Shown in pieces: positions 1-55,409 of a DNA stretch of 64,000 nt (positions are counted from its first letter, which is position 1; each line of letters opens with the position of its first letter). This DNA comes from Gnetum montanum. Its lineage: Eukaryota > Plantae > Gnetophyta. The position numbers were made by a program, and so were the translations under genes. A model generated the notes under the pieces. It saw only the letters and a list, made by a program, of their open reading frames with translations. It searched no databases and was not told where the DNA came from. The stretch is from the NCBI GenBank assembly GCA_015680685.1, contig MNCI01001024.1, positions 149,577 through 213,576 on the forward strand, read 5' to 3'.

Positions 1-405
1 TTGGAAGATGAACCTAATTGCAAAAAGATGTTTCTATCAAAGAAACATGAAATTCCATTAGCTAGTGTATATTTTGCTTACTTTGAATCTTCAATAAATA
101 AATCAGATTCTAAATTCAAAAACAAATGATGTTGATGGATAGTAGTCATTAAGAATCATAGTTTACTAATTACTTTTCTATGATTAATGAGGATAGATCA
201 AGAACATTTTTCATTGAGGATTTAGATTATATTTGGTACAATGTCCAATTCTTCCAAGTTATCAGTTACTAGAGTTGATTTCTAAAGAAGAAGTGGAGAA
301 TAATCAAGATCAAGCTTTATATCTTGAACAAGAGCATCTAATCATATACCACTTATGGTAGAATTGCAGTTACTTCCATCAATTCATAAGGTTGATCAAG
401 ATTAG
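1..405 (+). pseudogene. CCR4/CNOT6-like EEP nuclease ORF, C-terminal part (copy A), cargo of a non-autonomous LTR element
   Basis: Manual translation gives ...FTNYFSMINEDRSRTFFIEDLDYIWYNVQFFQVISLLELISKEEVENNQDQAL...SNHIPLMVELQLLP...DQD*. This matches the CCR4 C-terminus (EPxFTN...F.gtLDYI.Y...LLEL....ALPS...SDHI.L.AE). Contains stops and frameshifts, and is homologous to 61400-61795. Confidence 0.85.
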
Positions 406-843
406 GAAGTATCTCACACTTACTTTTATTTATAATCTTATTATTTTCTTCATTGTTTATTTTATATCTTAATTAGATATGTAAAATATCCAAGTTAATG
501 GAAATTAGAAATAAAGAATTTACCATGCCTTCACTTAGGTAACTAGATATGAGTTGCACTTTGTGTGATCCTAATTAAGACTGGTGATTGGTGGTTGGTA
601 GATCTTTAATTCACTTCTTGTCATTATCTTAGAAAATGAAGTAAATAGTTAAAAAGTAATATTGAATTTTCCATATAATTCTTCTCACATATATCTTGTT
701 TATAAAATAAGTAAGAAACAAGTCCAACTTGAAAGAAGAAATCAAATTATTGGAACACCAGATCATAATAGAGGCATTGGAGTTGGAAAACGATAGTGAA
801 TGTAGATTTGTTCAAGGTTGAATGAAACCTAAAGAGGGTAGAT

Positions 844-1419
844 TATTACATCCCCATTCCCAAATGATGTTTCTTCCTAATAAAGATGGTACCTCTTCAT
901 AACAAGTATTATTGTTATCATAATAGGACTTGAAAGGGTAGTTGTAATTAAGATCTAAAGAGGCATGTTATAATAATAGATGCATATCTTGAGGTAATCA
1001 TTGGGGATTTGATCTAAATCATTTATAATTGGGCTTAGAGGTCATGCTAAGCATGGAGTGGTAAAGCCAATATAGGCAAGTCACAAGAGTTGAGTGAAGC
1101 AGGACAAGAAGTGAATTGGCCACCCCTTCTAGTTGGGTAATAGGCCTAACCATGGTGGTAGTGATAGATTGCCTCTAATGGGATAGATGCCAAAGGAAGA
1201 AAACCCCAAGGAACACTCTCAAAACATGATCTAGATACACTATTCCATATCAATAAAGCATCATTTTCTTCTGCTTTCTACATTTTCCCTATTATTTCCT
1301 TTATACATAATGTTGAATATGACATATAGTTCACATTTGGTATATTTTCTTTGTACACATAATGTCTAATATATTGTATATTTGACATTTACCATGACAT
1401 CTGGGGATGGGATGCCACG
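844..1419 (+). mobile_element. 3' LTR (~576 bp) of CCR4-carrying element copy A
   Basis: Starts TATTACATCCCC after the purine tract AAAGAGGGTAGAT and ends GGGATGCCACG. Collinear with the LTRs at 62235-62809 and 21270-21842 (reverse complement). Confidence 0.85.
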
Positions 1420-15786: not shown

Positions 15787-16785
15787 GTATATGTGACATC
15801 CTATTCCTAGATGTCATGGCAAACATAAAATATACATTATATTAGGTATTAGGCATAAGAAGCTAATGCACTAAAATTCCAATATGTGTAACATTTAACA
15901 TTACATGTAAAGAAAATAATAGAAAAAATGTAGAAGGAAAGAGGAAAAAAAAAGATTTATTGATGTGGAATTATGTATCTAATCATGCTTTTGGTGTTCC
16001 ATAAGGTTTCATTCCTTTAGATTCTATCTATTAGAAGCAATCTAACACTACCACCATTGTTAGGCTTATCATGCACCAAAAGGGATGGCCAATCCCTCTC
16101 CTATCCTACTTTTAGTTGGCTCTCATTACTCGCCTTTATCAGGTTCACCACTCCATGTTGATATGACCTCTAATTTCCAAGTATAAATACCTTAAGTTAA
16201 ATCTGAAAGGTCACCTTAAGAGATATGTTTTTTATTTTAATATGTAATTTTGGATCTTAATTTAGGTCTTGTTATGATAATCATGACACTTGTTATAAGG
16301 AGACACCATCTTCAGTATGTAGTGACATCATTTAGGAATGGGGACATTAGAATCTATTCCATTAGGTTTCATTCATCCTTTAACAAGTCCAAGTTCACTA
16401 TATTTATCTAGCTCAAATGCTCTTTTTATGATTGTATGTTTTAATAATTTGATTTGTGCTTTGGGCTTGAAGTTGTCTCTTGCTTAGTTTATAAACAAAA
16501 TATAAGTAGGAAGAATTTATATAACTATTAAATATTACTTTATCAACACTTACCTCATTTTCTAAAATAGTGACAAGACGTGAATTAAGGATATATCAAC
16601 TACCAATTATCAATCCTAGCTAGGGTCACAAATAATGTAACTCATATGTGGTTACCCAACTAAATGTAGGGCAAAACCTCTTTCTCAACAAGCATTGCCT
16701 TAGATATTTTACTTATCCAATTAAAATATAAATTAAATAATGAAGAGAATTATAAGATTATAAAATATAATTAAGATAAAGATAC

Positions 16786-18032
16786 TCAATCTTGATCAAC
16801 CTTAGGGATTAATGAAAGTAGTTGTAATTCTACCATAAGTTTTATTTGATTAGATGATCCCATTAAGGATGGAAGGACTTGATCTTGCTCTTTCTCAAAC
16901 TCTTCTTTAGAAATTAGCTCTAGTAACTTGGTAATTTGGAAGAATTGAACATTGTTCCAAATATAATTTAGGGTCTTAATAAAAAATGATATTAACTCAT
17001 CTTCATTAATCATGGTAGAGTAATTTCTGAACTGTGGTTCTTGATGAGTACTAGCCATCAACATCATTTGTTCTTGAATTTTAGGATTTGATTTATCAAT
17101 TGAAGATTTGAAGTAAGTAGAATATGCACTAGCCAATAGAATTGTATGTTAAATTGATGGGAACATCTTCTTCAAATTGGGTTTTTCTTCCAAGGATTCT
17201 TTTACACATCCATATTTTAATAATTAATAAACACTACTTCCAACTTTCACATTAAAGTTTTCATAAATAACAAATGACATTGGATTGATATGGCTTAGGA
17301 ATAATTTACTCTTCAAAATTTCCTCTGTTTTCTTAATCAAGTATGCTCCTTGACATAGTCTAACATTTGGACATTTTGATTTGACAATTAAATGTGTGTT
17401 AACCATACATACATAACTTCCTAATAACTAGATTTTTAGTATCAATGCTAAGGATATGTGGCTTTTATGAAAACTTGTTTTTTCTTTATTTTCCATAATT
17501 TGAAGTTCTAATATTTCAAAAATCATATCTTCTAAACTTCATTTAAATCATTGTACTAATTTATACTTGGTTTTTTTATAAAAGATCATGTGACCATCCA
17601 TGTGGTAATTTTTGCAATAGGCTAATTTGTATGGTTTCAAAGAATAATTTTCACAAGAACCTTTTCACTTGAAAATACCTTTGCATCCCATCCTTTTAAA
17701 GTTAGGTTGAAATTGGTATAGGAATTTCATTGAATGAATTCTTATAGGCATATGAAATCAACATCCAAATCTTTTGATTATGCTAAGATGTGTGGATATT
17801 GATACTCATGCTAGTATTAGGCCCATGGTGGACATACAAGATGTTTATCAACACTATCTATTGATCCTGCCAACACATTATATGTTACTACTTTAATTTT
17901 CATTCTTGGATTCTCTACTAGATTATTTCTCTTCATGGGTATCATACACCTTGTCAAAATAAGATTATGACTCTTTATGTTCTACAATATGATTTGGTTG
18001 TAAGATGGATTGATATATATCTTCTTAACCAT
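16786..18032 (-). pseudogene. CCR4/CNOT6-like EEP nuclease ORF (copy B)
   Basis: MVKKIYINPSY...KIKVVTYNVLAGS...HLVCPPWA...DFICL*EF...HMDGHMIF...MVNTHLIVKSKCPNVRLCQ...FVIYENFN...ASAYSTYF...EPQFRNYST...FIKTLNYIWN...LLELISKE...LPS...SNQIKLMVEL. Intronless, with stops. Confidence 0.88.
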
Positions 18033-18640
18033 TCTAGTTTATTTATTGATTAAGTGCTTTTAGGTCAATAACATGTGGCTATATTACCTAGATTCCTAAT
18101 GACCTTTCTATCTTCATTTAATACACTAACTCCAACAGTGCAAGTAATGACATAGTAGGGGTTAGTAATCTAAGACTATCTATTTATAGAGGTTCAGCCC
18201 TTAGTATTAAGGCTCAAAATGGCCTAAGAGGTTAAATGTTTTAGTCCCAAAAATTAAATTACTAGGCATGCTCTATTCTTATAAGCCATGAACCTTTAAA
18301 GCATAGTTTATGATATCATTGAATTTATCAAATACTCGGATGATAAATCTAACCTTACCATTTAGTTCAAAAATTTGAAAAATGTTATGAGTAACTATTT
18401 ATATTTTAGAAATGGACATCGTAGGCCCAAGTTCTGTTAAAATTTAGTATCTAAGAGTCTTGAGCCATCATGTTGAACAAGGACTAAAAAGGCAATTTTT
18501 GAAGCTCCATGGGATAGATTGACTTCACCATTATGTCTAGAAGGTTGAAATCTATAGGAAATTATTCTTTGTTTATAAAAAAAGGCTTTTAGAATCAAAA
18601 TTTATGGCTTATAGATTATAAGATTTAAGGCATGAAAAAT

Positions 18641-18677
18641 GAAACTTCCTGAAAGGTCACCCATACCAGTTGCTACC
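18641..18677 (-). ncRNA. 5S rRNA-derived fragment (IE/C-box part) in copy B
   Basis: rc GGTAGCAACTGGTATGGGTGACCTTTCAGGAAGTTTC versus plant 5S GTAGTACTAGGATGGGTGACCTCCTGGGAAGTCC. Same position relative to the CCR4 ORF as in copies C and D. Confidence 0.6.
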
Positions 18678-18849
18678 AAAAATGTCAATTTTAATTAATT
18701 ATCATATTTTCTCCTCTTTTCATATTTAAAATTTTTTCACCTAAATTTCAACTTAAAATTTTTCCATTATTTTATGGTTTAAAATTTTTTGGCAATTTCT
18801 AGAAAAATTTTCATCAACTAACAACAATTTTCTAGTTGCCAAAAACTAC

Positions 18850-19210
18850 TAAAGGATGCAGGCTTTCATAGCACCAATGATATTTACGATGTGCTATGGA
18901 GGTATCTTTTCTTAGTGTCTATAGTTTCTACAATATATGGGGAAAGGTAGCTTTCCTCAATAGTAGCAGAATCCATGGTGTGCTTGGGAGGTAGCTTTCC
19001 TCAATACTGGCAATGTCCACAACATGTTGAGAAAGGTAGCTTTTCCTGATGCTAGTGTTATCTATGGTGCATTGAGGGAGGAAGCTTTACTCGATGCTAG
19101 TGATGTCCACTATGCAACAGGGGAGGGATCTTTCTTCAACATTGATCGTATTCATGGTGGTGCACTAGTGAAGGTAGCTTTTCCTAGGACCAATGTTATC
19201 CATGGTCATC
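18850..19210. repeat. ~45-bp degenerate tandem repeat in copy B internal region
   Basis: GAAGGTAGCTTTCCTCAAT...RTCCAYGGTG recurs about 7-8 times. Confidence 0.7.
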
Positions 19211-19983
19211 ATGGTTAATTGAAAATTCTATTGGGTTTTTTTGGAAATAGTAGTAGTGATGATAGTAGTAGTAGTAGTAGTGATGGCAATGTTGATGGTG
19301 GTGTAAATGGACCACATAGGACACAAGAAAAAAATGTATAGAAGTTTGAAAATGTAAAGAATGGTACATAGGATAGTGAATAGTGGTAGAAGGGTTTCTG
19401 TAGCATACAATAGGTAGATGCTTTGATGGTTGTAGGTTGTTACAAACCCTACATGATCCTAGGCTACCTAATGAGGTTTTTTTTTTTGGGCTACGACCCC
19501 AATGGATTTTCATGAAATGTAGGTAGCACAATGACGACAATGGAGGGTTGCAAGGGATGCCACTAGGAGGAGTGTAAGCATAGTAGGTGAGATGTGGTAG
19601 GCCTAGCCAAATGTAAGGTTTCATGATAAGTGTAGTGGCACAAGGATTTGGGCAATGGACAATGGTGCAAGATTTTGGGTAGTGGACAGCAAGGATGAGC
19701 ATAAAAAGGCATAGCAAAGGTATAGAGTGTAGGGCAGGTGGCAACAAAGGTGTGAAGATAGGTACTGGTAGGAACTATAGTGAACAATGTAGCGGGAGGT
19801 AGTGGTAGGCCAAGAGGGCTTTGGGGAGGAAAAGGTAGTGGTAGAAAATCATGTGGTAGAATGACAATAGGTGTCATTAGAGTGACGAGTAGCATTGTAG
19901 CATGTTGCAGCATTTGTAGCCCTAAATGATCCTACACAAGACTATGCAGCCCTGTGTGGCCCCTTGCAAGGCTTTGTAGTATG

Positions 19984-19984
19984 T

Positions 19985-20032
<48 letters not shown>

Positions 20033-20040
20033 TGTATATA
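19984..20040. repeat. (TA)n(TATG)n compound microsatellite
   Basis: Directly visible in the sequence. Confidence 0.95.
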
Positions 20041-20100
20041 ATTTAATAATTATTATTTAAATATTTAAAAATTAGCTCATATTTTTACTAAACTTGCAAA

Positions 20101-20177
20101 GTTGCCTGATGGTTAGTTAGAGGTTGTGTAAGACTTTCATTTGATAACCTAGAGGTCATGAGTTCAATCTCAATCCC
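20101..20177 (+). other. tRNA-like A-box/B-box module in copy B (antisense to the element)
   Basis: TTGCCTGATGGTTAG ... ACCTAGAGGTCATGAGTTCAATCTC. Homologous to 29404-29480 (rc). No complete cloverleaf. Confidence 0.5.
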
Positions 20178-21847
20178 AAAATGTTTGATTGAAAGTTAAA
20201 TAGTAATAAAAATTGAATTGAATTGTTGTTATTATTAAAGTTAAAAATTATTAAATTTTAATGATCACATGGATGTTGAGAAAATAATATATCTTCTAAG
20301 TGTAGAAAAACCAATATATCTCCCAAAGTGTAAGGTAGATCAAGATGAAATTTAGATCATTAGAACCATCCCAACAAGTACTACACATTGGACATGATTT
20401 CCAAGTCTAAAATCTAACTTTCATTTTCATACATTAGAAGAACTAAAATGGCTTAATTTATTGAATTGGCATTCCAAGGCTAATGGATAGGCAACATGAT
20501 AACTTCTAGATGACTTAGATTTGAATTATAAATTATATATTGATCATTAGATAGGAATATAATACTTTGATTTTATAAATTATTAAGGATTATATAGGCT
20601 TATTTTCTCATATCATGGTTATACCCTAGCATGGTACTAAGGAAAATATTATGACAACATCACTCATTGACTATTGGTTTTCCTATGAGCCTCATGATCA
20701 TAACCATTATTGGTTGAGTAGGATGGAGCATTCTTATGACTAGTTTTACCTTCCTTAAACTTACCAATACACTTCTTTAAACATACCAATACATAGGTCC
20801 TAGGTAATATGATTTTTGCCAAGTTATAGGATGTTTTAGAAATAGTAAGTTGACTTATGCCATGATTACTAATCTTTTGGGAGGAACTTAATAATGGCCT
20901 TAATCAATTAACTTTTCTAGCATCAATACAATATGGAAAAGAGCTACCTAGATTGGTATATCTTTGTATTAATAATGTCTCTTGCAATTGATGAATCTTG
21001 ATGAGGCATAATCAAATCTCCTAATTGATGATATCCTTGAAATAATCTTGTTGGTTGGTGGGTTTATGTCTCTTGTAGATGCCTAATCCATTGTCCATGA
21101 AAATAAATGAAAAGATATCTTTTAGCTAACAAGGATCATCCTAGACATATGACACATATGGTGATGACCCATTACTCTCTATAGGTTATGGTTCCATGGA
21201 TCATCATCAGGCTATAGTTGACCCATGGTTTTGAATGACCCTTAGGTCATTGTTTACTTTGATACCAAATGTGATATCTCATTCTCAAATGTCATGGAAA
21301 ACATAAAATTTAGATTATATTAGATATTATATGTAAGAATATAATATAAAAAATGCCAAATATCTCTAGCATTTGACATTAACCATAAAGAAAATAATAG
21401 GAAAAACGTAGAAGAAAAAAGGAAAAGAAAACATTGTTGATGTAGAATAGTGTATCTAGATCATGCTCTGTGTATTCCTTGGGATGTTATTCCTTCAACA
21501 TCTATCCCTTAGAGGTAATCCAACATTAACACTATGGTTAGGCCTATCACAAACAAGAGGAAATGACTAGTTCTCTTCCTATCCTACTTCACTTGGCTCT
21601 TGTTAATTACCTTTATTGGCTCTACCACTCCATGCTAATACAACGTTTAATATCTGGGTACAAATAACTTAGGTCAAACCTTCAAAGATTACCTGAAGAT
21701 ACATGTCTATTATTATAACACATCTTTTTGGGTCTTAATTACAACTCTCATTTTAGGTGTTGTTACAATAATCATGACACTTGTTATAAGAAGTCATCAT
21801 CTTCATTATGCAATGACATCATTTGGGAATGAGGATGTTACAATATA

Positions 21848-28265: not shown

Positions 28266-29256
28266 CTTGAAATTTATTACCTCTTGGAGATAGATGCCAA
28301 AGGAAACTAACCTCAAGGACACCTTAAACCATGACCTATATACACTATTCCACATTAATAAATCATTCATTTCATTTTCTTCTATGTTATTTCTATTATT
28401 TTCTTTATTCATAATATCAAATGTCATATATATTTGATATTTTTCATAACATATAGGAATGAGATGTCATATTTTATATCAACGAAAACCATGATTTAAG
28501 GGCTAATCAAAACCAAGGACCAACTACAATCCCATGATGAACCATTAAGCCACAATCTAAGGAGAAGAATGAACATGGATCATGTTCAACTTGAATCACA
28601 CTAATCAAGATGATGCCTTCTCTAGTAAATTCCATTAATATTAGTAACCAAGAGATTCAACTATGCTTCGACAAGGTAAAACAACTATAAGAGGCTATGG
28701 TAAGATAAGGATAACATCAGTCTAGATAACTCTCATCCTTCATTATAAATAATAGACATGTCCTTGGTACCCTAAGGTAATCTTTATGTCCCTTCCTTAA
28801 GCAAATAGTTAGAACTAGGTTCTTTGGAATATTACTATGCTACTAAGTTCTATCCCTAGAACACCTAAACCCTAGTAACTCAATATTAACTGACCCTATA
28901 TATGGCCCATATAAAAATAAGTTAGTGGATTTAACCTAGCCATACAATTTATGATTTTTTCTAAAGTCAATTTTTCATTAATAATCAAAATCAAGTCGCT
29001 CAAAATTCATCATGTTACTCATACATCAACTTGCTAATGTCAGTTTGATAAAATAGATTAAGTTAGTCTTTCAAGATCACAAAAATTCAGCTCATTTTTA
29101 ACCTCAAAATTAATCCAATGTGTAGCACTCATCAAGATGATTCCAATGGCACAAATTTTGTGCTAATTAGGCTTATAGTATGGAACATATTATCATTACA
29201 AATTTCTTATTATTCATGGCTTAATTAATTTTTTAAATAAGGTAAAATTTTTTAAG

Positions 29257-29480
29257 CTAGGAATTATACCCGTGACTTTGCCTCTACTAAGTCCAACTCT
29301 TAAATCCATCTTCCCTAATCACTGAGTCAAGGTTTGAGGTTATGTTGATTATTTTAATATTAAAAAGTTAAAAATAATACACAAAACATAAATTTAAAAT
29401 TTTGAGACTTCAAATCAAATCTAAGACCTCTTAATCATAAAACTCCAATCCTACCCCTCTTTGTCTAACCACTTGAGCAA
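29257..29480 (-). other. Two tandem tRNA-like A/B-box modules in copy C (29257-29330, 29404-29480)
   Basis: rc TTGACTCAGTGATTAG...GTCACGGGTATAATTCCT and TTGCTCAAGTGGTTAG...AAGAGGTCTTAGATTTGATT. Confidence 0.5.
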
Positions 29481-30149
29481 CTTTCTAGGTTGTTGTACAT
29501 AAGATTCATTTATGTATATGAATATTAATAAGACATTAAAAATAAAATAAAATAGAATACATCTTAACCCCTTCATGTTAGGGCTATGTCTTGCACCATT
29601 CCTCACTATGACTAGTGATGGCATTGGCCTACTATATCATGTTCCATCCTACTATGCTATAGTTGCATCACAACTAGCTAGGTTGTGGTGTAGGCCTCCC
29701 ACACCATTACATGGAAGGACTAAAGTGCCTCAAATTGTCATGTTGTTGAAAGTTAGGCAAAAACCACAAGCCTACTACATCATTATCATTATTTCCTACC
29801 ACCTCTTCCATCATTCTTGCCTATCACCTCCCTCATCATTCTCATCACATTGTTTGCTACCTTTACCATTTCCTCATAGCCAGCACCTACCTTCAAAAAT
29901 ATTGCATCCTTAATACATGCACCAAGACCACCATGCACTCCAACCCTTAACACCATCATTTCCAACCTCTTGAAGAGCTCTTAGTGCTAAAAAAGAAGTT
30001 TGTTAATTCGTAAAAAAATTCAAAAATCTATTAATTTAAGGAAAATTTTGATTTTTTAATTTTATGGTGAAATGGATAAATTTAATATGTGTTTTATAGT
30101 TAAATTTCATTAATTAGTCAAACTAATGGATTTCCAATAGTTGAGATAA

Positions 30150-30212
30150 AATTCCATAATTAAGCATGCTCATCCTCGAGGAGTACTAGGATGGATGACC
30201 TCTCAAGAAGCT
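30150..30212 (+). ncRNA. 5S rRNA-derived internal promoter segment in copy C
   Basis: AATTCCATAATTAAGCATGCT...GAGTACTAGGATGGATGACCTCTCAAGAAG versus 5S AACTCCGCAGTTAAGCGTGCT...GTAGTACTAGGATGGGTGACCTCCTGGGAAG. Confidence 0.75.
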
Positions 30213-30814
30213 CTTAAGAAGTCTTGAAATTCATGTCTAAACTTTTCAGCTTTGAAAGAAATAAAGTTTGATTTTGAAAGCATTTTTCAACACATGAAGA
30301 GTTATTTTTAGTATATTTTAATCTCTCAAATGCAATGGTAAAGTTGGATTTACCCTACAAATCTCCAAAAGATAGTTTTTAATCCTTTCCCCAAAACTAT
30401 GTCTCAAAATTCTTTGAAGCACAATTTAGCATAACTTGGACATATATTATCCATTTCTAACATATAAATAGTTTTTTCTTATATTTTTTAGTTTTTTGAA
30501 CTCAATGATAAGGTTAGATTAATAATCCAAATAGCTAATAATAAGGTTTTACCTTAAATCATGTCTTACCAAGCTATAACTTAATCTAACTAATCATACT
30601 TGATAATTTAATTATTTGGACTAATAAATTTAACTCTTTAGGATCTCAAGATTACATGATTATAATATGTAAATAGATAGATCTCAGCCACTAACATCTA
30701 GTATGTCATTACTGATACTATTGAAGTTAGTATGGTAAGAATGGTAGAAATGTCATTTAGAGTCTAGGAAGCATAGCCAAGTTAGTATTTGAGAGAATAA
30801 TTTGGTAAACTAGA

Positions 30815-32055
30815 ATGATAATGAAGATGTATACTAGTTCAACTAGAAACCAAATCATTTATAACAAACATTTACCATCATGAAGATTCATAATCTTGTT
30901 TTTACAATATGTATGATATCCATGAGAAGAAATAAGTCAAGAGAAAATCCAAGATTGAAATTTATAATGTAAAATATGCTAAGGACCCTAGCCAATGAAA
31001 GATAACATTCACTATGTCTATCTTGGGCCTTGGATTAGCATGAGTACTAATAATCATTCATTCTTGTAGAATTACAAGATTTAAATGCTAATGTCTTATG
31101 CCTACAAGAAATCCTATCATGTGAATTTATGTATCAACTTTAATCCAATTTAAGAAAATCAGGATATGAAGACATTTACAAGAAAAAGATTCATGTTATG
31201 GTTCTTCCTATGAGTTGTACTGATTAGCCTATTATATGAACCAAATATGGATGGTTGTTCGATCTTTTACAAAGAAGAAAAATTTGAGTTGGTAGAAATA
31301 TTTGAATTAATATTAGAGAACATGATTTTTTAAATTCTAGAACTTCAAGTCATGGAAAAGAAAGAATTATTGAGATTCCAAAGAAGCCACATAGCCTTAG
31401 CATTGCTACTTAAAATCTAGTCATCAAGGAGATGTGTATGTGTGATTAATACACATTTAATTCCAAATCCAACATGCATATATGTAAAACATTTTTCAAC
31501 TATCTTACATAGCTAATCCAATTCAAGAATGTTTGAAATATAAGTTATTCCTAACCCAGACTAGTCTTGACCTAGTCTCATTTATCCTTTGTGAAGAATT
31601 CAATGTAAATGTTGGAAATGTGTTTCATAAATTCTTAAACTATAAAAGAGTAAAAGACTTGTTGAAAGAGGAATTGATTTGAAAAATATTCTTTCATCAA
31701 TTAATCATATCATCCCTTTGGCCAATGCATACTCTACATATTGTAGTCTACAATAGACAAGTTAAATTCCATAATTCAAAAATAGATGATGTTGATGAGT
31801 AGTATTTATTAAGAATCAGAATTCATGAATTATGCTACCATGACTACTAAACATGAATAATATCCTTCTTCAAGACTATAGATTACATGGTATAATGCTC
31901 AAGTCTTCAAAGTTATTAAGTTGTTAGAGTTAATTTGTAACAAATAAGTTGAAGAATAACATCAAGTACTACCATCATAAATAAAGTTATCTAATCATGT
32001 ACTCTTATGGTAGAACTACAACTACATCCCTTGATCCTTAATATTGATAACAATC
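30815..32055 (+). pseudogene. CCR4/CNOT6-like EEP nuclease ORF (copy C)
   Basis: CLSWALD, ANVLCLQE, MDGCSIF, HIALALLL, INTHL, FILCEEFNVNVG, NAYSTF, IDYMV, LLELI, SNHVL. Collinear with the other copies and more decayed. Confidence 0.8.
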
Positions 32056-32999
32056 AAGAATTTCTTAACTTACTTTTATTTCTATTTTATTCTTATTTAT
32101 TTATTAAATTTATATTTATAAATTAGGTAAGCAGAATGCTTTTTAAATAATATAAGTAGGAAAAAATAATTCTACCTATCTTCACTTGAATAACTAGCTA
32201 TGAGTTTTACATTGTATGATCCTAGTTACAACTGGTGATTGATGATTGATTGACCTTTAATTCACCCCTTGTTATTACCTAGATATAAAGGTAAGAATTA
32301 ATAAAATAAGATTTATTATTCTAAATTTTTTTCTTACTTATATTTTTAATTGTAAAATAAGTGGAATAATATTAAAATATTCAACCTCATTCCAAAAGAA
32401 CAAATCAAAGTATTCAAGTATGGAGAAAGCACTAAAGCTAGAGAAAGATGATTAAAATGAACTTGTTCAAGGACAAACAGAAAATAAGAAGGATAGTTTA
32501 TCATGTCCCTATTTTCAAATTGAGCTATTTTCTAACAAAGATGGTGTCACTTCATAATAAAGGTTTTAATTATTATAATAAGATTTGAAAGAGTGAAGTT
32601 ATAATAACAGGCACATCTTTTAAGATGACCTTTGGTAATTTGATCTAACATGTTTATACCTAGACATTAGAGGTCATGTCAATATTAAGTTGTGGAGCAA
32701 GTAATGATGAGTAACAAATGTTGAATAAAGTGAAATAGAAAAGTGACTTGCCATTCCTTTTTAATGGTTACATGCCTAACCATGGTGGTCATCCTGAATT
32801 GCCTCTAAGGGATAGATGCTAAATAAGGATAATCCCAAAAAATCCTTTGATCATAATCCAAATATACTATTCCACATTAATAAATAATTATTTTCATTTC
32901 CCTTTTTATTTTCTTTACACAATGTCAAATGTTATAGATGAATTGAATTTTGGACCATTTCTACAATTTTCATCATAAGAAGTAAGAACAATTGCAAGT

Positions 33000-35350
33000 T
33001 TCTTCACTTTGAATAACAATATTGACAAATCATGAATGGTATCTAAGAAAAACATACCAATTTTGGCACAAAAAATAGTAGGTTTCTATAGTGAAAATAA
33101 AAGATATCTAAGTCTCCTACTCATTTGAAGCTATTGCTACAATGTTAGGATAGCCCAATATTAATACAAAAACAACTATGGTATCTATCCAGTTTGATAT
33201 AAAATGAAGAAATTTATGGATAGATAGAGATTATGGAAATAAGAACAAGAAGTTTGAAGAATTTTCATTAGCTAAGAAAATATAGTTTAAGATAGAAACA
33301 TATCACATGCAGCCTATGAAGTGCATGAACAAGATATTAACATATGTCACCTAAAGAACCATCATTCTTAGCAGAAGATATCTAGTAAATATGCCTCATC
33401 TCCTCTTCTTTGAGATAGAAAGAAGATTTCAAGAAACATAATCAAGTAAGCCTACATTGCCATTTCCTTACCTAATAAGAAATCTATGTAGATGAGTAGG
33501 TATCGAGAAATATATCAATAATATAGTCAAAAGAGCTTAAAATACATCCCATATACATATAGTTAAGCTTGCGCCCACTAAGAAAGATTAAGTAGAAACA
33601 TCATCAACCACAAAAGTCGTAGGCACATCAGCACTAGAAAAAACCATACTAATAATAGAAACTAGTAGTAGGTTGTAGTACACCTATTCCTATAGCAAAT
33701 CCATGCACTTAGAGACTAGTTATAAGTTATTTACAAGAATTATTAGAATCTAGAAACTAAAGAACAAAATACTTAACAAGAATGCTTAAAGCCATGCAAG
33801 ATCAACTAGATGTCTCATTAGATCTTGCAACTGGATAGATCTTAGTTAATGTTACAAGAAATGAGAGTATTGCCAAAATCTCTAGAAATACCACTACATT
33901 TCAAATGATACTTAAACTAGGAGAAGAAGCTATAAACTTGAACATGTTACATGAAGGAAAGAAAAAGCTTAAGAACTCATTGTTGATCATATTAGAGATA
34001 CTTTCAATATATTTATAGTACCATAAAAAATTTCTCCTAAATTACAAGATGTGTAAGTAGTAATGAGTACTAGGAAAAAATAAAAAATAATGAATATTGA
34101 TTAACATAAAGATGCCTTAGAAAGACTATCTAGGATGTTTTTGGCATTCCTAAAACCATAACAATCATTTAGTCTAAACTCATTTTCACAAAAGGTAATC
34201 TAGTCAATTTAGAATTTCGTTTATAATATGATAAGTTGGAAATAAAAAAAATATAGAATAAGATAGTCCAATTTAAAATCCAAATTCAGGTTCCTAAAAG
34301 GAAAAAAGATTTTAAAAAATTTAGAATAAAATATGTGAATAACATTTTGGCTAACTAACATTAGTTAGAAATAAAGAGAGAAGAAGTAACATGAGACACA
34401 TTATTAGCAAAAGCTAGACATATGTTCATCAAAAAACCAGTGCTACATTAAAATAATAAATTATGAATCTCACTGTAGACAATAGAAGATTGATCAAATT
34501 TGAAGGAAATAAAACTCCATTTGAGAAAAGGCTCAATAATCTTTGTAGGTAGTTTATACGAGTCAACCAAGACATTAATAAATAGGCTAGAGAAAATAAG
34601 AAATTTTCAATGGAAGAAATCTATGCAATCATTAAGAAATATTTAATTGAAATTAAAATGTAGTAAAATAAGATCAACAAACATGAGAATCTCAAAGAGC
34701 ATTTTCAAGACTAAGTTCACATGTAAAGTTAGGTGGATGAGAATGAAATCAAATTAGCAAAAGCCAAGGTCAATGCTTCATTTCAACAAATTCTCAAGTA
34801 TTAGCCCATACTTAATAGAATCACAATGATTAATCAGATATAGCTAAAAATGAAATAATTTTATATTGAGAACATGAATCTATACTTAGATTTTACTAAT
34901 ATTTTATATGCAAGCTTAGTAATGTTAATAGTAGGTAGACAAAGAAATGAGCTTGAGAAGCAACTGAACACCATGTATTCACTATACAAGAATGAGCATA
35001 AACATTGTAATAAGATACAATAGAAACTACTTATTGCAAATATAGAATTAGAGGTCCTAAAACAAATTATACTAATCAGAGGAATGTAGCTAAGGACTTG
35101 ACAAAATACATAACAAATTATCAAGATCTGCAACCATAAGTTAATAGATTCAACATAAAAAAATAAAAGTCAACATTTCCAATTTGGCATGGATAGGAAA
35201 TGATCATAGGATAAATGAAAAGAATCTTAGAGCATTGATAAGATACTTTTACATGGAAAGGATGGTAACTATAGGTAAGCAATCACAATAGAAACCAATG
35301 TAGTAAGGACCATCACCTCTAGGAATAATAGGAAGACCTACACTGTCTAT
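33000..35350 (+). pseudogene. Degenerate Athila-like extra ('env-like' / plant transposon protein) ORF with long coiled-coil tail
   Basis: YSFEAIATMLG*P and LVNMPHLLFFEIERR....KPTLPFPYLIRNLCR*VGI resemble the Athila extra-ORF motif (INVG.II..EI.....LPFPSLIT.LC...GV). The downstream ~1.6 kb reads as K/E/Q-rich heptad-like coding sequence with many stops. Confidence 0.55.
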
Positions 35351-38054: not shown

Positions 38055-38943
38055 CTAGCTATCACATCCCAATTTCCAAATGATGCTACTACCTAATGAA
38101 GATGGTGTCTCTTCATAACAAGGGATATTGTTTTCATATATTTGACATTTTCCATGAAATCCAAGGATGGGATGTCACAATTGGTATCAAAGCAAACCAC
38201 AACCCAAGGCCCATTCAGAATCATGGGCCAACTAAAACATGAACTTAATGATGAATCGTGAAGCCACAACATAGGGAAGGAAATTGATCATCATTGAATG
38301 CACCATATGTCTATTATGTAAGGAAGAAGATACCATTCAATTGATTTCATGAATAATGGATTAGATATCTACAAAAAGAAATAGATGCCACTGACAAAAT
38401 TCTTTCATGGATATCATTAATCAATGAATATTTGATCACACCTCATCAAAATTCATCAATTACAAGAGATGTTGGTAAGAAAATGATACACTAATCTAGG
38501 TAACTCATACCCATATTAATATTATAAATAGTAATTGATTAAGGTCATTGTTAAGTTTCTCCTAAAACATTAGTAACCATGACCTGAATTGATTTTTGGT
38601 TTTGTTGAAATTCACTATTCAAGTAATCCACAAGATTTCAAGTTACCATATGTCAGCCTAGAAATGTCAATTCAACAAAATAGGCTAATTTTGTGCTTTT
38701 AATTACTAAAAATTCAACTATATTTTTGAAACCTAAGACAATGTGCAATACATAGTACTTGTTAAGACAATCTGAATAGTACAAATTTTGTCTCGATCTG
38801 ACTTATGGTTTTAGAGATATTGATGTTTAAAGTTTCTCATTGTATGTGCATTAAAATAATATTAAGTTATTAATTTATTATTTGAACAAAAAATAATCAA
38901 AATTTTAGGGTTGAAAATCAACAAGAATTGTCGTTTACACATA

Positions 38944-39185
38944 TTGAATCCCTAACTTGTCATTGGTCGAACCACCACATCAATTATTGAGGCAAGGTGG
39001 AATAAAATAATAATAATAAGGTTTAAAAAAATCTCTAAAATACTTATTGACCAAGAGGTCATAGGTTTGATCCCTCACTCCAAAATACTTTTAATTATAT
39101 AAAAATAAAAATAATAATATAAATAAAATAAACATATTATTATTTATTAAAAAATGATTTGGAGGTCATGCATTCGACCCCATGA
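38944..39185. other. Cluster of tRNA-like modules in copy D (38944-38995 minus; B-box-like 39047-39081 and 39155-39185 plus)
   Basis: CCAAGAGGTCATAGGTTTGATCCC and TTGGAGGTCATGCATTCGACCCC resemble the tRNA variable loop plus T-arm (GAGGTC...GGTTCGANCCC). Confidence 0.5.
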
Positions 39186-41389
39186 CTCAACTTAGTTTTA
39201 TTTCTTTAAAAAATAAAATAAAACATAATAAAATTTAAAATATTTTAAAATTAATATTAATAAAAATTAAAATAAAATAAAAATTGTAGGTCATGTTGCC
39301 CTAGAAGGGCCACACAAACCTAGAAAGAGCCACACAGGCCTTGCAAGTCATATAGGACCTACAAAGGTTGCACTAACCTTGTAGGCCACACTAACCAGAC
39401 ACAACTGCCATAGGATGTTGGCCACCATGATGCTCCACCCTGCCATTGCCAATCATGTCATTGGTGCCTCAACTGATGTTGACATCAGCTCATGAATGTT
39501 GTTGTGTTCTCCACCTTGTGACATCTAGCATGCATGCCCCTGCAATAATTTCCCTAGAGCACTCCCACTATATCATGCCCTAGATCATGCTCTATTGCTT
39601 GCTACAAAAACCCGCACCTAAAATCCAAAGAAATCCTCATCACATTTTTTGCAACCACCATTGACTAAGCTATTGTTTCCTATCAATGTTTCCATAAACT
39701 AAAACACTATCAAATTTGGGCTCCTGGATCTCGATTGCAAATTTGGATAAGTATCAAAACTTGACAAATTTTTTCTAAGTGTTAAGACTACACTCCCACT
39801 ACTAGGACTATGCTCTAGAGCATAGTCAAAGTAGTTGACATAGACAGCTGAGATTTGCAAAATTTTCTAAGTGTCAATAGCAACTGGAAAATTTTCTAAG
39901 CATCCTAACTACACTCACCCTACCAAGACTATGATCTAGAGCATAATCAACCCTAGAATAACTAGTTTTGCAAATTTTCCTAAGTGTAAAGCTAGATGCT
40001 ACTGAGCATGGTTGGCATGAAAGAAATAGTTTGACAAAAGTTATAACTTTTAGCACTATGCTCCAAAGCATAGTTAGCATATTCAGCACTAAGAACATCA
40101 ACTTTGCAGGACTTCTCTAAGTGTTTATGTTATGCTTTCCCTACCAGGACTACACTTCAAAGCGTAGCTAGTGTAGTCTATACTAAACCTCACTTTTTGC
40201 AGAATTTTCCTAACTCCCTAGACTATGATTTATAGCATAGTTAGTGTAACCATGTAGGAATACCTCCAGAAGCCTCCAAAACTCAACACTGACTAGCATC
40301 TTAGCTCCAACATTCCCTGAGTAAGGAAGATTAGCAATTTGCATTTCATTTGTAACCCCCATTTGCCCCGAAATTTTACCTATGCTCAACACCACTTGGA
40401 AAAGTGGGCAGCATAGTCCCAGAGCGTAGTCTCCAAATTGCACTATTTTGCATTATTTTCAACTACTTTTTGATTTTTTTGGAACTTTACACGTAGTCTT
40501 GTAGCATAGTCATAGTTTGGCAATCTCACAAGGTCCATTGGAGCACAACAATACAACACCATTTGCTTTAGTGAAATCATAGTTGGAGCTAGCATAGTCC
40601 AAACTACCCCTCTATCACGTGGCACCTGATCCACAACTCATGCTAACCCTAGGCCTATAAATACCCCAGTGCTCTACATTTTAAGCGTTGGCATTTTGGC
40701 ATTCCCTTTGGCATTTGAAGTAATCAATTTGCATTCTAGCATTTGGCAAATTCAAAGTGCACTTAGCATTTTTGGGCAAACACCATTACACATCACCACA
40801 ACATCAGTGTACATCACCCAACATACCATTCACCACCATAGCTTGTAGGACACCATGGTTACTAACCTAGTAGGTTCAAACTCCATGATGGATGTTAGTT
40901 CTTCATATCTAGACACCATGAGACTATGACTCTGCTTGCCTACTATGCCTATTATACACCACATATGTCCTAAACTTTCCTTCATAATTGACTACGCTCC
41001 CCCCCCCTCCCCATTTAGGGTGGTTCCACCTTCTCTCTAGCTCACATTTGATGCATTTTTTTCATTTTCTCCTACATTTTAGCATTCTACATGCATTTTT
41101 CATTATTCTTCTCACAAATATGTGTGTTCAAATCTTTGTTTTTTTGCTTGAAAGTTTCACTATTCTCACCCCTATGAGTAGGATGAACATCAAAAATATT
41201 TTCCAAATCCCTTAATATTTTGTTTCCTCATAACGCCTGTAAGTCCCAGTTCGATTAACAAGACTGTTCTAGGCACCCTGCCTTTGCTTTCAAGTAGGCC
41301 CTCATGTAGAAGTGGGATCAAGACTATGTGACCATGGACCTCTTCATGTTCCATTCCAACCTCTAACATTTTTGGTCACTACAATTTTC

Positions 41390-41406
41390 TAGTGCTAGAA
41401 GGAGGG
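41390..41406 (+). promoter_or_regulatory. Primer binding site, tRNA-Asn-like
   Basis: TAGTGCTAGAAGGAGGG versus the expected TGGCGCTAGAAGGAGGG (two transitions), located 6 nt after the LTR end. Confidence 0.7.
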
Positions 41407-41799
41407 CCTTTACCATTTTCTTCTTCAGCCATCCCTTGGTTATTGCCTTGCTTACTCTCTGCATCATCGGTGTAGACTAGACCCTATTGTCGATACCCGT
41501 AGAACACCACTAAAGAACACCAAAGCATATAACTTGCACTTGACCAAATTCTAGGTTCTCAATAGAGCACAGCTAGCTCTAGCATAGTGAGTGTAGTAAG
41601 CTCTGACCATAGTCCCAAAGTTAGCATCTTTTTCAGTATTTTCTAGTTTGTCATTTTTCTACATTTTTACGATTAGCCATTTTTTTAGCAATTTTATACC
41701 TAGCCATTTTTCCTGGTTCTCACACTTAGTCAATTTTCAGCTTTTGCAAATAACAACTCATTGCATATTTTTCTTTTGCATCGTGAACCCTGAGTAGCC

Positions 41800-44230
41800 T
41801 TCAACCTCCACTTCAAGCATGGTTGTTTCCTAGTTCGTTTAGTGGAAAATCCCAATAAACCTTCCTAGGTTTGGGAGCCATATCCTAGCATAGAGGCAAT
41901 CTCTTCAGTAGCGTAACTTACCTCCCAAAGTTATGGTGCTCAATGATGAGCAATACAACTTCATTTTCACAAATCTCTAGGTTGGTTTGCCCTTAGAATG
42001 CTAAGAAATGGATGCCAAATGTAGTTATGATATCATGCATTGCAAAGGGAGGGAATGGTTCCTTTCTGATTTTGACTTTGTTCCACTCACAAAAGACTAC
42101 CAATGGATGTTGTATAACCTCATTCGCAACATGAGCTATGAGGCAAGGATGGACTACGAGAAGCTAGATGAGTTTGAGGCTAAATTTGAGCATGATGATT
42201 CACTTCATTCCTCACTCTAGTAGATAGCCTCTACCTTTTCTCCTCCATCATCCCACATCCCTATGTCACTACCTAAGTGAATGCCTGTGGTGGCAACTCA
42301 CCAAACACAACAAGTGCACCAGGAGGTTACCCTTCCTTTTAGCATCCCCTTTAGCATGCCTTTCACCATTTCATTATGGCCAATTCAACCTATTTAGCCT
42401 ATGTATCCTATGTAGCCTATTTAGCCTTTTGTACCTTTAACTATTGTGCCTACACATCCTTATGTGCACACTGTGCATGTTTCTTAATTGCATATGGCTC
42501 AAGCATCATTCATCCTACCGCCTGTCATGCCTCCACCCTTTGCAATGGCCTAACCCAAAAACACATGGTGGGGGTTGGGTGTTATGTTTGTGACATAGCC
42601 TACATAACAAGCATCACATGTGGTCACATAACCCGAAGTTGGGTTGTGGGCCATCCAAATAGCACAATGGGTGGCACAACTAATGCATCCTACCACAACC
42701 TCACTAGGCTTGGTTTAAGCATTCTAGCTAATCCAAAGCCTCATTGAAGAGGTTAAGTGGCTTATGGTCTCCTCCTTTGAAACCATCCATGTGATGGAAT
42801 TTTACTAGAATGATTCGATTAGCCCTATGGTTCCACCACTAGCACTACCCATTGGGGTCCCATTACCCCAATTTACCAAATACAACAGTGAAGGGGACCC
42901 TAACACCCATCTAGTGAGCTTTTGGTGAGAATTCCTTTGCTACAAGCGTGGCTAAATGCCATCATCTACATGTTTTCCATGTCCTTGATCAACAAGACAC
43001 TAGATTGGTATTGTGTGCTCCCTAGGGCCTTCATCACCTATCTAGAGGAGTTGCTTATCCAATTTGTCACTCACTTCAAGTACAATTTGAAGCCTAAGGT
43101 GACCCTGGATCAACTAATGCAAGTGAAGTAAGGTCACTTAGACCAATGCAAAAACTCATTTAGCTATGGAGCACATCTCTTAACAAGATCTACAAGCCCA
43201 TTGTAGAAACACACATGCTAGTCATTTTCAAAGGTGTAATGAATGATTTTATCAAGTTGAAACTATATTACCTTGCCCCGTAGTCCTTAAGGCAAGAATT
43301 TGCTTAAACTAAGAGCATCTAGAATACAGTGAAGGCCAGCAAGGATCCAACCTACATGGCCTAAAAAAACTTGCATGTAATGAGAGAAAAGGACAAGGAC
43401 AAAGGCAAACAAGCAACTACAACCATTGCAACGATGGCCAACAAGGCTAAGATGGCCAATGGCAAACCAATGGCTAAGCCACCCAAGGACCCAACCCACA
43501 ATAAGATGGCTAGCTCTAGCATAGCTACAAACAACCAGCTCATGTCATTGATAGCCATAACACCAACTACCACAAGGTCTAACTTTAAGTGCAAGGATCA
43601 GTTGAAGTACAAATTGTTGCCTATCAAGTAGTTGAAGATCTTGGACTAACTACTTCATGTTAAATGCATCTAGTATAAAAAAATGTTTGAGGATGCTTGC
43701 AATTAGAATGACTGATATTGTGAGCTCCTCAAGAACCCTTTGGCTGTATTACCTAATGAGCTTTCAGTCCCTAAGCATTTTAAGTTGGACCAATTTTGCC
43801 AATATCACCAATTTCAAGGTCACAATATATACTTTTCCATGATATTATAGGACAACATACAATGCATGATTGACAAGGATGAGTTGGTCCTTGACACCAC
43901 CAATCTAGTATGCCCCCAAAACCAATCAATGGGGGCTTACAAGTATCCACTTAATGCAAGTGGTATAGGGAACATCATCAATGCTATTAGCATTGATAAA
44001 AATTCAGAACTAGAGGAATTCATTATCAAATCACCATCTCAGGCACCCATAACACCCTTTGTGGTTAGGGCCCTACAACACATTGCAAATACAACAACTC
44101 AAGCACCCTTCATCATAAGGGAACTACAACGTGCGAACTCTCCACTTGTTCAGAGTCTGGTGGTAGGGAATGCTTTAGTTCCTATTCACCCAAGATCCCA
44201 TCCTATAGCCAACAACAACAAGAAAGTGAG
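41800..44230 (+). pseudogene. Tat/Ogre gag
   Basis: LPQFTKYNSEGDPNTHL, MFSMSLINKTLDWY..LP..FITYLEELL.QFVTHF, and the Ogre-type FCQYHQFQGH motif at ~43795. Confidence 0.85.
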
Positions 44231-44779
44231 ATGACAACCTATGAGGTCCAACAAGCACTTGATTAATCAAATGCTTAGGCAAACTAGGAGCAAAGGGCAC
44301 TAGGCCCACCAAAGCCTATCACCTTATCTTCCATCCTAATGGCCTAACCAACTAAAGAGGCCACTACAATAAGTAACCAACAATGGAGCATGAAGGCTCC
44401 AAAGCAAAAAATGTAAGCAAAGTCTAAATCCCCTCCACAAGAGATTCATCTCTTGGGTCACATGGAGGAGATGAAGGCAAGTAACAACAAAATAGCAGAT
44501 AGTAAAAAAGACTTCCTTGAAACATTGGCATAAGTCAAACAAGATCTAAAGTAAAAACTATATAATATTAAGCCTATATGACCTAATAATGACCTCCTCC
44601 ACCCACTGTGAGTCACTAGTGTACATGTTGACCTCCATTCCTATCACGGAGGACAACCCAGTAGATGAGTAGTCCATCCATGTTGTGATGTTGCCTATGC
44701 CCTTGTATGAATTGAGTTTAATATCCCTAGCATTTCATGATGAGGTGATCAAGGTGAACCCTAAGAAGGGTCAAGTAAT

Positions 44780-45200
44780 TACCATGTCGAGGTTCATTAC
44801 CATCTACATTAGACAATGTAAAATCTATAGATGCACATCAATGGTATGGCGATGATCAATGTCATCCCATACATAGTCATCGACAAGATTGATCTCACTA
44901 AATAAATCAAACAAACAAAGAGAACATGCCTTAAATCATTTAATGGATCACACATCATCATAAGGGAAACTATTGTGATAGCCTTTGTTGCAGGGGAGTA
45001 TTTTTCCACCACTACTAAGTTCATAATGATTGAGGAGATGCCAAGTTTCAACATTATCTTAGGTAGGCCCTAGTTAGCTTAGCTATGGGTCATCTCCTCC
45101 CCTATCCATTAGTAAATCCATCTTCCATATGAAGGTGGAGAGGTTATCATATATGGTGAAAACATAGCCCCTTTGACCATCAACAAAATTAACACTAAAC
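44780..45200 (+). pseudogene. Tat/Ogre aspartic protease
   Basis: INGMAMINVIP...LKSFNGS...FIMIEEMPSFNIILGRP*L...SPIH..IHLPYEGGEVIIYGE. Confidence 0.8.
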
Positions 45201-55375: not shown

Positions 55376-55409
55376 TATGTAGCACCTCATCAATGCAAAG
55401 CAAGGTAAG

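What the first reader, a model, noticed from the sequence alone, without database searches (positions are those of the whole stretch)
15792..21842. Non-autonomous LTR retrotransposon family whose only cargo is an intronless CCR4-type deadenylase-like gene
Seen: four copies (1-1419, 15792-21842, ~28275-32935, 38060-62809) share one layout. It runs LTR (~575 bp), iMet PBS, tRNA-like modules, variable repeats, 5S-derived segment, ~1.25-kb ORF, ~440 bp, PPT, LTR. Two copies are bounded by different TSDs (GTATA/ATATA and CTAGC/CTAGC) and the copies sit in different host elements and orientations, so they are independent insertions. I found no gag, PR, RT or INT motif inside. Established: the ORF motifs (YNxL, CPSWAL, DxxCxQE, DGC.IF, NxHL, LCGxFN, SAYS, EPxFTN, LDYI, SDH) are those of the CCR4/CNOT6 EEP nuclease domain of the CCR4-NOT deadenylase, not the APE endonuclease of LINEs. 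Inference: a processed host CCR4 mRNA was captured and kept as a fixed module of a mobile family. It may act on poly(A) tails of host or helper-element RNA, or as a decoy against CCR4-NOT-dependent transposon silencing. I am not aware of a described LTR family with this cargo.
Basis: partly seen in the sequence, partly recalled or inferred. Interest (0 to 1): 0.9.

Follow-up and report, generated by a model that had tools for sequence, protein, structure and literature searches.

The report
Dead LTR retrotransposon carrying CCR4 nuclease domain
An old, now dead family of helper-dependent plant LTR retrotransposons carries, instead of gag-pol, an intronless and strongly diverged copy of the nuclease domain of the plant CCR4 deadenylase, an enzyme shown in Arabidopsis to restrain such elements.

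Summary
The structure is real. Four copies lie in the window: A 1-1419, B 15792-21842 on the minus strand, C about 28276-33051, and D 38060-62809, which is split by a roughly 19-kb nested element. All share about 570-bp LTRs with inverted termini, an initiator-Met-type primer-binding site, a 5S-rRNA-derived piece, a CCR4-family EEP reading frame and a purine-rich tract. B and D are bounded by 5-bp target duplications. Flanks are unrelated.

No gag or pol remnant was found. No tRNA-like module was found.

No copy has an open frame: each near-full copy has 10-15 stops plus private frameshifts. Almost every break is private or has a sense codon in another copy, so the master copy was probably intact. 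Decay is ancient and driven by deamination.

The frame resembles land-plant CCR4 homolog 1/2. It shares two motifs with them, and one is plant-only in my set. It is intronless and lacks the plant N-terminal 234 residues. Identity is only about 30%, and trees cannot place it. Core residues are preferentially kept. No copy keeps the catalytic Asp of GDFN.

Whether the gene served the element is untested.

The scan noted this family about 76 times on other DNA of this genome. I found no published description.

The parts
15792..21842 (-). Copy B (the focal element), complete, about 6.05 kb, non-autonomous LTR element
   Evidence: Collinear with copies A, C and D. LTR pair is 75% identical, K2P 0.31.
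21270..21842 (-). B 5' LTR (573 bp), TGTAACATCC...ATCACA
21256..21267 (-). B primer-binding site, TGGTATCAAAGT. Initiator-Met type with 2 mismatches, 2 nt after the LTR.
18830..20207 (-). B variable internal region: pyrimidine-rich on the sense strand, with microsatellites. It does not align between copies and has no Pfam domain.
18625..18745 (-). B 5S-rRNA-derived segment (approximate limits). Degraded, and not detected by Rfam in this copy.
   Evidence: Aligns to D's 5S-like segment with a conserved box-C-like core. Rfam negative.
16786..17978 (-). B remnant of the CCR4-family EEP frame: 14 in-frame stops and a private 1-nt frameshift. The longest open piece is 16789-17148.
16352..16380 (-). 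B purine-rich tract (putative PPT) next to the 3' LTR
15792..16351 (-). B 3' LTR (about 560 bp), ends GGATGTCACA
15787..15791 (.). B target-site duplication, low-coordinate copy (GTATA). Its partner is ATATA at 21843-21847.
38060..62809 (+). Copy D, interrupted by a roughly 19-kb nested LTR element (about 39786-58821). Flanked by CTAGC at 38055-38059 and 62810-62814.
38060..38179 (+). D 5' LTR, internally deleted to 120 bp. The PBS TGGTATCAAAGC follows at 38182-38193.
59812..59917 (+). D 5S-rRNA-derived segment in sense orientation, followed by a T-run
   Evidence: Rfam RF00001, 25.8 bits, E 0.011, below gathering score 38. Alignment.
60608..61795 (+). D remnant of the CCR4-family EEP frame, the best preserved copy. 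It has 10 in-frame stops, a private +2 insertion near 60878 and a private +1 near 61675.
62235..62809 (+). D 3' LTR (575 bp)
28276..33051 (+). Copy C, the most diverged (about 66% identical to B). Its 5' LTR is truncated. The EEP remnant lies at about 30930-32060.
1..1419 (+). Copy A, cut by the window start. It holds the C-terminal end of the EEP frame (1 to about 400) and the 3' LTR (848-1419).

Best explanation
This is an ancient, extinct family of non-autonomous LTR retrotransposons of about 6 kb, of the LARD type.

Shown:
- LTRs, an initiator-Met PBS, a purine tract, 5-bp target duplications and independent insertions.
- No gag or pol.
- In sense orientation, a 5S-rRNA-derived fragment followed by an intronless CCR4-family nuclease-domain frame.

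Inferred:
- The frame derives from a plant CCR4 homolog 1/2 (CCR4a/b-type) message, of which only the nuclease domain was taken up. The likely route is template switching during reverse transcription onto co-packaged cellular RNAs, with the 5S piece acquired in the same way.
- The chimera was then copied in trans by an autonomous element that uses the initiator-Met primer.
- The frame was open in the master copy when these four copies were made.
- It had been kept under purifying selection on its fold during its long divergence from host CCR4, whether in a host paralog or in the element. It therefore encoded a real EEP-fold protein.
- That protein lacked the N-terminal part of plant CCR4 and so probably acted outside the CCR4-NOT complex.
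- After insertion, all copies decayed through deamination of methylated cytosine.

Whether the protein helped the element or was only a passenger is not decided by this window. I lean slightly to passenger or an unknown role.
For: Structure.

No gag-pol:
- The internal region is about 4.9 kb, including the 1.2-kb frame.
- 18 open stretches gave no Pfam hit.
- tblastx against the gypsy and copia remnants of the window found nothing.
- As a control, an RT piece of similar decay was detected.

CCR4 family:
- PDB hits.
- An exhaustive phmmer search gave 47 hits; the ten checked were mostly PF03372, and the named ones were CCR4 or PDE12-like.
- tblastn covers the whole domain in B, C and D.

Plant CCR4a/b affinity:
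- For copy D, land-plant CCR4 homolog 1/2 proteins rank 3-15 of 382, at about 139 bits. PDE12-like and Angel-like proteins rank around 300.
- Against Ginkgo the E-value is 1e-30 and the match is collinear.
- The CPxWAL-W-YR motif is shared.
- LLEL[LI] occurs only in the 47 rows of the plant part of the list, P0323-P0382, many unnamed.
- The tree with the element joined to the plant clade had the highest likelihood found.

Intact master copy:
- Of 28 stop sites, those inside the domain are private or have a sense codon in another copy.
- The one site that is a stop in all three copies has TGA in one and TAG in the others.
- Frameshifts are private.

Past selection:
- 30 of 37 columns that are at least 90% conserved in 31 references are kept, against 93 of 220 other columns.
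- Second codon positions diverge least.

Decay: CpG observed/expected is 0.09 and two thirds of differences are transitions.
Against: - Identity to plant CCR4a/b is only about 30%.
- The element clade sits on a stem of about 2 substitutions per site. AU tests do not reject joining it to PDE12-like proteins either.
- Plant Angel-like and nocturnin-like paralogs were not sampled.
- The best PDB hit of one piece is ANGEL2, not CNOT6L.
- No poly(A) remnant follows the frame.
- No copy keeps the Asp of GDFN: D and C have Glu and B has Asn.
- The selection signal could date from a host paralog before capture.
- No helper, no expression data and no intact copy were seen.
Confidence: 0.72

Rival explanations
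1. Anti-restriction cargo. The element-borne CCR4 domain was kept because it countered host CCR4a-type deadenylation of retrotransposon RNA. It could have worked as a competitor or decoy at the poly(A) tail, or otherwise served the element's RNA metabolism.
For: - In Arabidopsis, CCR4a binds Evade RNA, shortens its tail and suppresses transposition (PMC12501189).
- The cargo resembles that same paralog type.
- It lacks the N-terminal 234 residues.
- It keeps most core residues.
- It has lost the GDFN Asp in all three copies here.
- It is fixed in all four copies, and by unchecked scan notes in many more.
Against: - No functional, expression or selection evidence within the element lineage.
- The ancestral state of the GDFN codon is unresolved: GAA, GAA and AAC.
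- The frame lies 3.2 kb into the RNA, behind many upstream ATGs.
- Non-autonomous elements gain no private benefit from a diffusible protein.
Confidence: 0.12
2. Pure passenger. A fast-evolving host CCR4-like paralog was captured shortly before a single burst and never mattered to the element.
For: - Inter-copy divergence (26-34%) is about the same as the LTR-LTR divergence of B (25%). The copies may therefore stem from nearly identical masters in one burst.
- Gene capture by plant LTR elements is common (PMC13317346).
Against: - It needs an unsampled, highly diverged host paralog.
- The cargo is retained across copies as different as C is from B and D, and reportedly across many loci.
Confidence: 0.3
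3. Deletion derivative of an autonomous element that carries the EEP frame as an extra ORF beside gag-pol.
For: - Extra ORFs occur in plant Ty3/gypsy lineages (general knowledge).
- An unchecked scan note proposes a chromovirus with a related LTR (s1-834346).
Against: - No gag-pol trace in any of the four copies.
- Scan notes on other loci all describe elements of 5.4-6.6 kb without gag-pol.
Confidence: 0.08
4. The EEP frame is the APE-type endonuclease of a LINE nested in an LTR element.
For: Both belong to Pfam PF03372.
Against: - All PDB and library matches are CCR4-family.
- CCR4-specific motifs are present.
- No RT lies downstream.
- The position is the same in all copies.
Confidence: 0.01

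Closest known systems
Bs1 of maize and other gene-capturing plant LTR retrotransposons (PMC13317346; rice and sorghum survey PMC3726574)
   Same: A non-autonomous LTR element that carries transduced, intronless host coding sequence in sense orientation and is mobilised in trans.
   Different: Bs1 holds fragments of three genes fused into a hybrid ORF and is low-copy. Here one whole catalytic domain is the fixed cargo of an amplified family, together with a 5S-derived piece.
LARDs (large retrotransposon derivatives)
   Same: Above 4 kb, with LTR, PBS and PPT, no gag-pol, and dependent on a helper.
   Different: As I recall, classical LARDs have a conserved non-coding interior. This one has a recognisable host-derived protein domain.
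Cassandra, Ajax and other TRIMp3 elements (PMC10886601)
   Same: A 5S-rRNA-derived sequence inside a non-autonomous LTR element.
   Different: In those elements the 5S part sits in the LTR of a miniature element. Here it is internal, in a 6-kb element, and is followed at once by a T-run, so it could not drive the downstream frame.
Plant CCR4 homolog 1/2 (AtCCR4a/b)
   Same: EEP nuclease domain with CPxWAL-W-YR, LQE, NTHL, FN, EPxFTN, LDYI, LLEL and SDH motifs.
   Different: About 30% identity, no zf-C6H2 N-terminal region, no introns, and the GDFN Asp is not kept in any copy here.
Acutely transforming retroviruses with captured cellular genes (recalled, not tested here)
   Same: A replication-defective LTR element in which host cDNA replaces gag-pol and which needs a helper.
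   Different: This is a plant genomic element fixed as an old repeat family, with no evidence of a phenotype.

Membership tests
LTR retrotransposon (structural definition) | Two direct LTRs with short inverted termini | tested here: met
   B 573 and 560 bp, 75% identical. D 120 bp (deleted) and 575 bp. Termini T(G/A)T...ACA.
LTR retrotransposon (structural definition) | tRNA primer-binding site right after the 5' LTR, and a purine tract before the 3' LTR | tested here: met
   Initiator-Met-type PBS in B and D. The purine-rich tract is conserved in 4 copies but interrupted.
LTR retrotransposon (structural definition) | 5-bp target-site duplication and independent insertion sites | tested here: met
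   CTAGC/CTAGC for D and 4 of 5 for B. Flanks are unrelated.
Autonomous Ty1/copia or Ty3/gypsy element | gag and pol (PR, RT, RH, INT) coding capacity | tested here: not met
   No Pfam hit in 18 open stretches. No tblastx match to other elements. The interior is too short.
CCR4-family EEP nucleases (CCR4/CNOT6, Angel, nocturnin, PDE12) | Significant sequence similarity over the EEP domain, and not to the APE or DNase I branches | tested here: met
   PDB hits ANGEL2 3.6e-7, CCR4, PDE12, CNOT6L and nocturnin only. tblastn E down to 1e-30 over about 330 residues.
CCR4-family EEP nucleases (CCR4/CNOT6, Angel, nocturnin, PDE12) | Complete set of catalytic residues (N of YNxL, E of LQE, H of NTHL, D and N of GDFN, D of LDYI, D-H of SDH) | tested here: not met
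   All are recoverable in at least one copy except the Asp of GDFN, which is E, N and E in D, B and C. 182 of 188 fetched relatives have GD[FLIY]N.
Plant CCR4 homolog 1/2 (CCR4a/b) | Lineage-typical motifs CPxWAL-W-YR and LLEL[LI] after DYIFY | tested here: met
   Both are present. LLEL[LI] occurs only in the 47 rows P0323-P0382, the plant part of the list, of 382 proteins; many of those rows are unnamed.
Plant CCR4 homolog 1/2 (CCR4a/b) | N-terminal region with zf-C6H2 (PF15801) | tested here: not met
   Only about 30 codons precede the domain. The match to Ginkgo starts at residue 235.
Plant CCR4 homolog 1/2 (CCR4a/b) | Phylogenetic placement inside the clade | tested here: inconclusive
   Stem of about 2 substitutions per site. 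Element plus plants is the best likelihood (+4.9, p-AU 0.78), but element plus PDE12-like is not rejected. The test of the Angel-like group did not finish.
LINE APE-type endonuclease | Best similarity to APE or L1-EN, with an RT downstream | tested here: not met
   No such hit at E up to 1. No RT in the element.
Cassandra / TRIMp3 | 5S-derived sequence inside the LTR of a miniature element | tested here: not met
   The 5S-like piece is internal (59812-59917 in D) and the element is 6 kb.

The most novel reading that the evidence does not exclude
A plant retrotransposon family acquired and kept a truncated, possibly catalytically altered copy of the host deadenylase that restricts LTR retrotransposons. 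It used this copy as a counter-defence by protecting or remodelling the poly(A) tails of element RNA. That would be a transposon analogue of viral capture of host immune genes.
Probability: 0.12. Interest if true: 0.85.

Novelty: new variant of a known kind. Interest (0 to 1): 0.55.

Why it matters
Capture of gene fragments by plant LTR elements is well known. A whole catalytic domain fixed as the sole cargo of an amplified family is unusual.

The cargo is of the CCR4a/b type. In Arabidopsis, CCR4a shortens the poly(A) tails of retrotransposon RNA and suppresses transposition (PMC12501189).

If the cargo was selected within the element, it would be a first case of a plant retrotransposon carrying a host RNA-decay factor. 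It would also give a handle on the conflict over deadenylation between host and element.

If it is a passenger, it still documents template-switch capture of an mRNA plus a 5S rRNA, and extreme decay by deamination.

Tried and rejected
- **Pfam on single open pieces of the frame:** no PF03372 hit, because the pieces are too short and decayed. Three of the four pieces tried found no CCR4-family match in PDB.
- **tRNA-like modules:** not found.
- **5S in copy B:** not detected by Rfam. It is visible only by alignment to D.
- **Protein Atlas:** only vague EEP leads.
- **Two homologue searches** returned stramenopile CCR4 proteins and no plants. The third gave plant CCR4 homolog 1/2.
- **Trees:** placement unresolved. 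The AU test for the Angel-like group did not finish.
- **Empty-site search with flanks:** nothing in the window.
- **My first reading that all three copies have Glu in GDFN was wrong for B.** Codon-by-codon, B has Asn there and its Glu comes from the Gly codon.
- **No consensus sequence was used.** The majority-consensus lines that DNA alignment prints by itself were not used.
- **Species identity:** the low GC and the gap between decayed and younger elements resemble Welwitschia (PMC8275611). This is only a guess.


Full report
**1. Setting**

The window is about 30% G+C, and CpG observed/expected is about 0.1. It is packed with decayed retroelements of plant type. One is a Ty3/gypsy RT remnant at 52709-53038, which matches RVT_1 at E 7e-5. 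Another is a copia-like stretch at 25707-25988. There is no ORF of 200 aa or more anywhere in the window.

**2. The observation**

A self-comparison shows four collinear copies:
- A: 1-1419, plus strand, cut by the window start.
- B: 15792-21842, minus strand.
- C: about 28276-33051, plus strand.
- D: 38060-62809, plus strand.

D is split by a nested element of about 19 kb, whose own 1.4-kb LTRs lie at about 39786-41210 and 57392-58821.

Details of B, read on the minus strand:
- Its 5' LTR is 21842 down to 21270, running TGTAACATCC...ATCACA.
- Two bases later comes TGGTATCAAAGT.
- Its 3' LTR is about 16351 down to 15792 and ends GGATGTCACA.
- The flanking pentamers are ATATA and GTATA on the plus strand.

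Details of D:
- CTAGC flanks both ends.
- The 5' LTR is reduced to 120 bp, and TGGTATCAAAGC lies 2 nt after it.
- The 3' LTR is 575 bp.

The PBS pattern occurs only three times in the window. Two of these are at exactly these positions. The flanks of the copies share no homology, so the copies are independent insertions.

The two LTRs of B are 75% identical, with K2P 0.31. That corresponds to roughly 12 to 70 million years, depending on the substitution rate assumed.

**3. What else is inside**

- ARAGORN and Rfam find no tRNA-like unit. Box-B-like matches are at chance level.
- A 5S-like segment is detected in D at 59812-59917, at 25.8 bits and E 0.011, below Rfam's threshold. Its core is shared by B and C in the alignment, so it is a feature of the family. 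It is internal, in sense orientation and followed by a T-run. It therefore could not transcribe the frame 0.65-0.8 kb downstream (inference).
- The stretch between the PBS region and the 5S piece does not align between copies and is pyrimidine-rich. That composition explains its long stop-free frames.
- Eighteen open stretches of the interior gave no Pfam family.
- tblastx against the rest of the window found no gag-pol similarity.

**4. The coding remnant**

The listed motifs sit on the plus strand in D (60752-61609) and C, and on the minus strand in B.

Evidence that this is a CCR4-family domain:
- The piece 61171-61422 matches PDB ANGEL2 (3.6e-7), yeast CCR4, PDE12, CNOT6L and nocturnin. 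It matches no APE-type enzyme.
- The same piece was scored against 1.84 billion representative proteins. It found 47 hits, none above 45% identity. The family itself is therefore not among the predicted proteins of that library.
- Nine of the ten hits checked carry PF03372. The named ones are CCR4, PDE12-like or 'Ccr4 deadenylase'.
- tblastn with these proteins covers the whole domain in B, C and D.

Evidence for a plant CCR4a/b origin:
- Land-plant CCR4 homolog 1/2 proteins were fetched. For the best copy D they rank 3-15 of 382, at about 139 bits and 30% identity over about 350 residues. PDE12-like and Angel-like proteins rank near 300.
- Ginkgo residues 235-284 and 298-562 map collinearly onto 60695-61713 at E 1e-30. 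The domain is therefore intronless, and the 234 N-terminal residues, including zf-C6H2, are absent.
- The motif CPxWAL-W-YR is shared with CCR4 orthologues. It is not found in the PDE12-like or Angel-like rows.
- LLEL[LI] after DYIFY occurs only in the 47 rows P0323-P0382, the plant part of the list (many of them unnamed), and in none of the other roughly 335 proteins. All four copies have it.

Limits of that evidence:
- Trees put the three copies on a stem of about 2 substitutions per site, with no resolved neighbour.
- Forcing them to join the plant clade gave the highest likelihood found (p-AU 0.78). Joining them to PDE12-like proteins is not rejected either.

**5. State of the frame**

In a codon register taken from D, 28 of 376 codon sites carry a stop in some copy: D 10, B 14, C 15.
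- Inside the domain, every such site but one has a sense codon in another copy.
- The exception is a conserved Trp position, with TGA in D and TAG in B and C.
- A neighbouring site reads TGA, CAA and TAA in the three copies. This is the pattern expected from independent deamination of one CpG-containing codon.
- Frameshifts are private to single copies.

I infer that the master copy had an open frame of about 385 codons.

Evidence for past purifying selection on the fold:
- 30 of 37 columns that are at least 90% conserved in 31 diverse CCR4-family proteins are kept in at least one copy. Only 93 of 220 other columns are.
- Second codon positions differ least between copies, at 0.19-0.25 against 0.26-0.35. 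This is a weak signal.

This selection may predate the capture. One universally conserved residue, the Asp of GDFN, is not kept: the codons are GAA in D, AAC in B and GAA in C. Its ancestral state cannot be settled from three copies.

**6. Reading**

The best explanation is a helper-dependent LTR family that picked up a 5'-truncated CCR4a/b-type cDNA and a 5S fragment, amplified, and died.

Divergence between copies (26-34%) is about the same as the LTR-LTR divergence of B. One old burst from similar masters is therefore enough to explain the copies.

Whether the protein served the element is open. The context makes that question worth asking. In Arabidopsis, CCR4a binds Evade RNA, shortens its tail and suppresses transposition (PMC12501189).

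**7. Known or new**

- Gene capture by plant LTR elements is established, for example Bs1 and the rice and sorghum surveys.
- 5S-bearing non-autonomous elements are known, but they carry the 5S part in the LTR.
- Full-text searches found no paper describing an LTR family with a CCR4 or deadenylase cargo. The Welwitschia genome paper does not mention one either.
- Scan notes report the same family about 76 times on other pieces of this genome, at 5.4-6.6 kb and always without gag-pol. One note proposes a chromovirus helper. These notes are unchecked leads.

**8. Limits**

- There was no access to the rest of the genome.
- There were no sequencing reads.
Pieces were searched separately by reference, and read-throughs in scripts carried X at each break.

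Noticed in passing
window 39786-58821: A nested LTR element of about 19 kb inside copy D. Its 1.4-kb LTRs are at about 39786-41210 and 57392-58821 and are 76-85% identical. It holds a Ty3/gypsy RT remnant at 52709-53038. Its G+C is about 39% against 30% around it, so it is younger than its host element.
   Followed up: partly
window 10882-14360: Direct repeats about 2.7 kb apart: 10882-11636 against 13635-14360, 77-85% identical. A perfect initiator-Met PBS, TGGTATCAGAGC, lies at 13618-13629 on the minus strand just beside one repeat. This looks like a second small non-autonomous LTR element.
   Followed up: no
whole window: Extreme CpG depletion, with observed/expected 0.09-0.12. Transitions make up about two thirds of differences between copies. 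Stops recur at the same Trp, Arg and Gln codons in different copies. Shared stops in this genome are therefore not proof of common descent.
   Followed up: partly
window 19199-19931 (minus strand); also 29551-29910 and 59376-59703: Stop-free stretches of 100-190 codons in the variable interior of each copy. They have no Pfam match and lie on a pyrimidine-rich strand, so they are probably an effect of composition and not genes.
   Followed up: partly
window 25707-25988: A copia-like open stretch (…YRGMIGSLLYLT…). It gave no Pfam hit at E 0.01.
   Followed up: partly
window 59900-59917 (D); B and C homologues: The 5S-like piece ends in a run of T in D and B. This would act as a Pol III terminator right after the 5S part and argues against the idea that the piece drives the downstream frame.
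   Followed up: no
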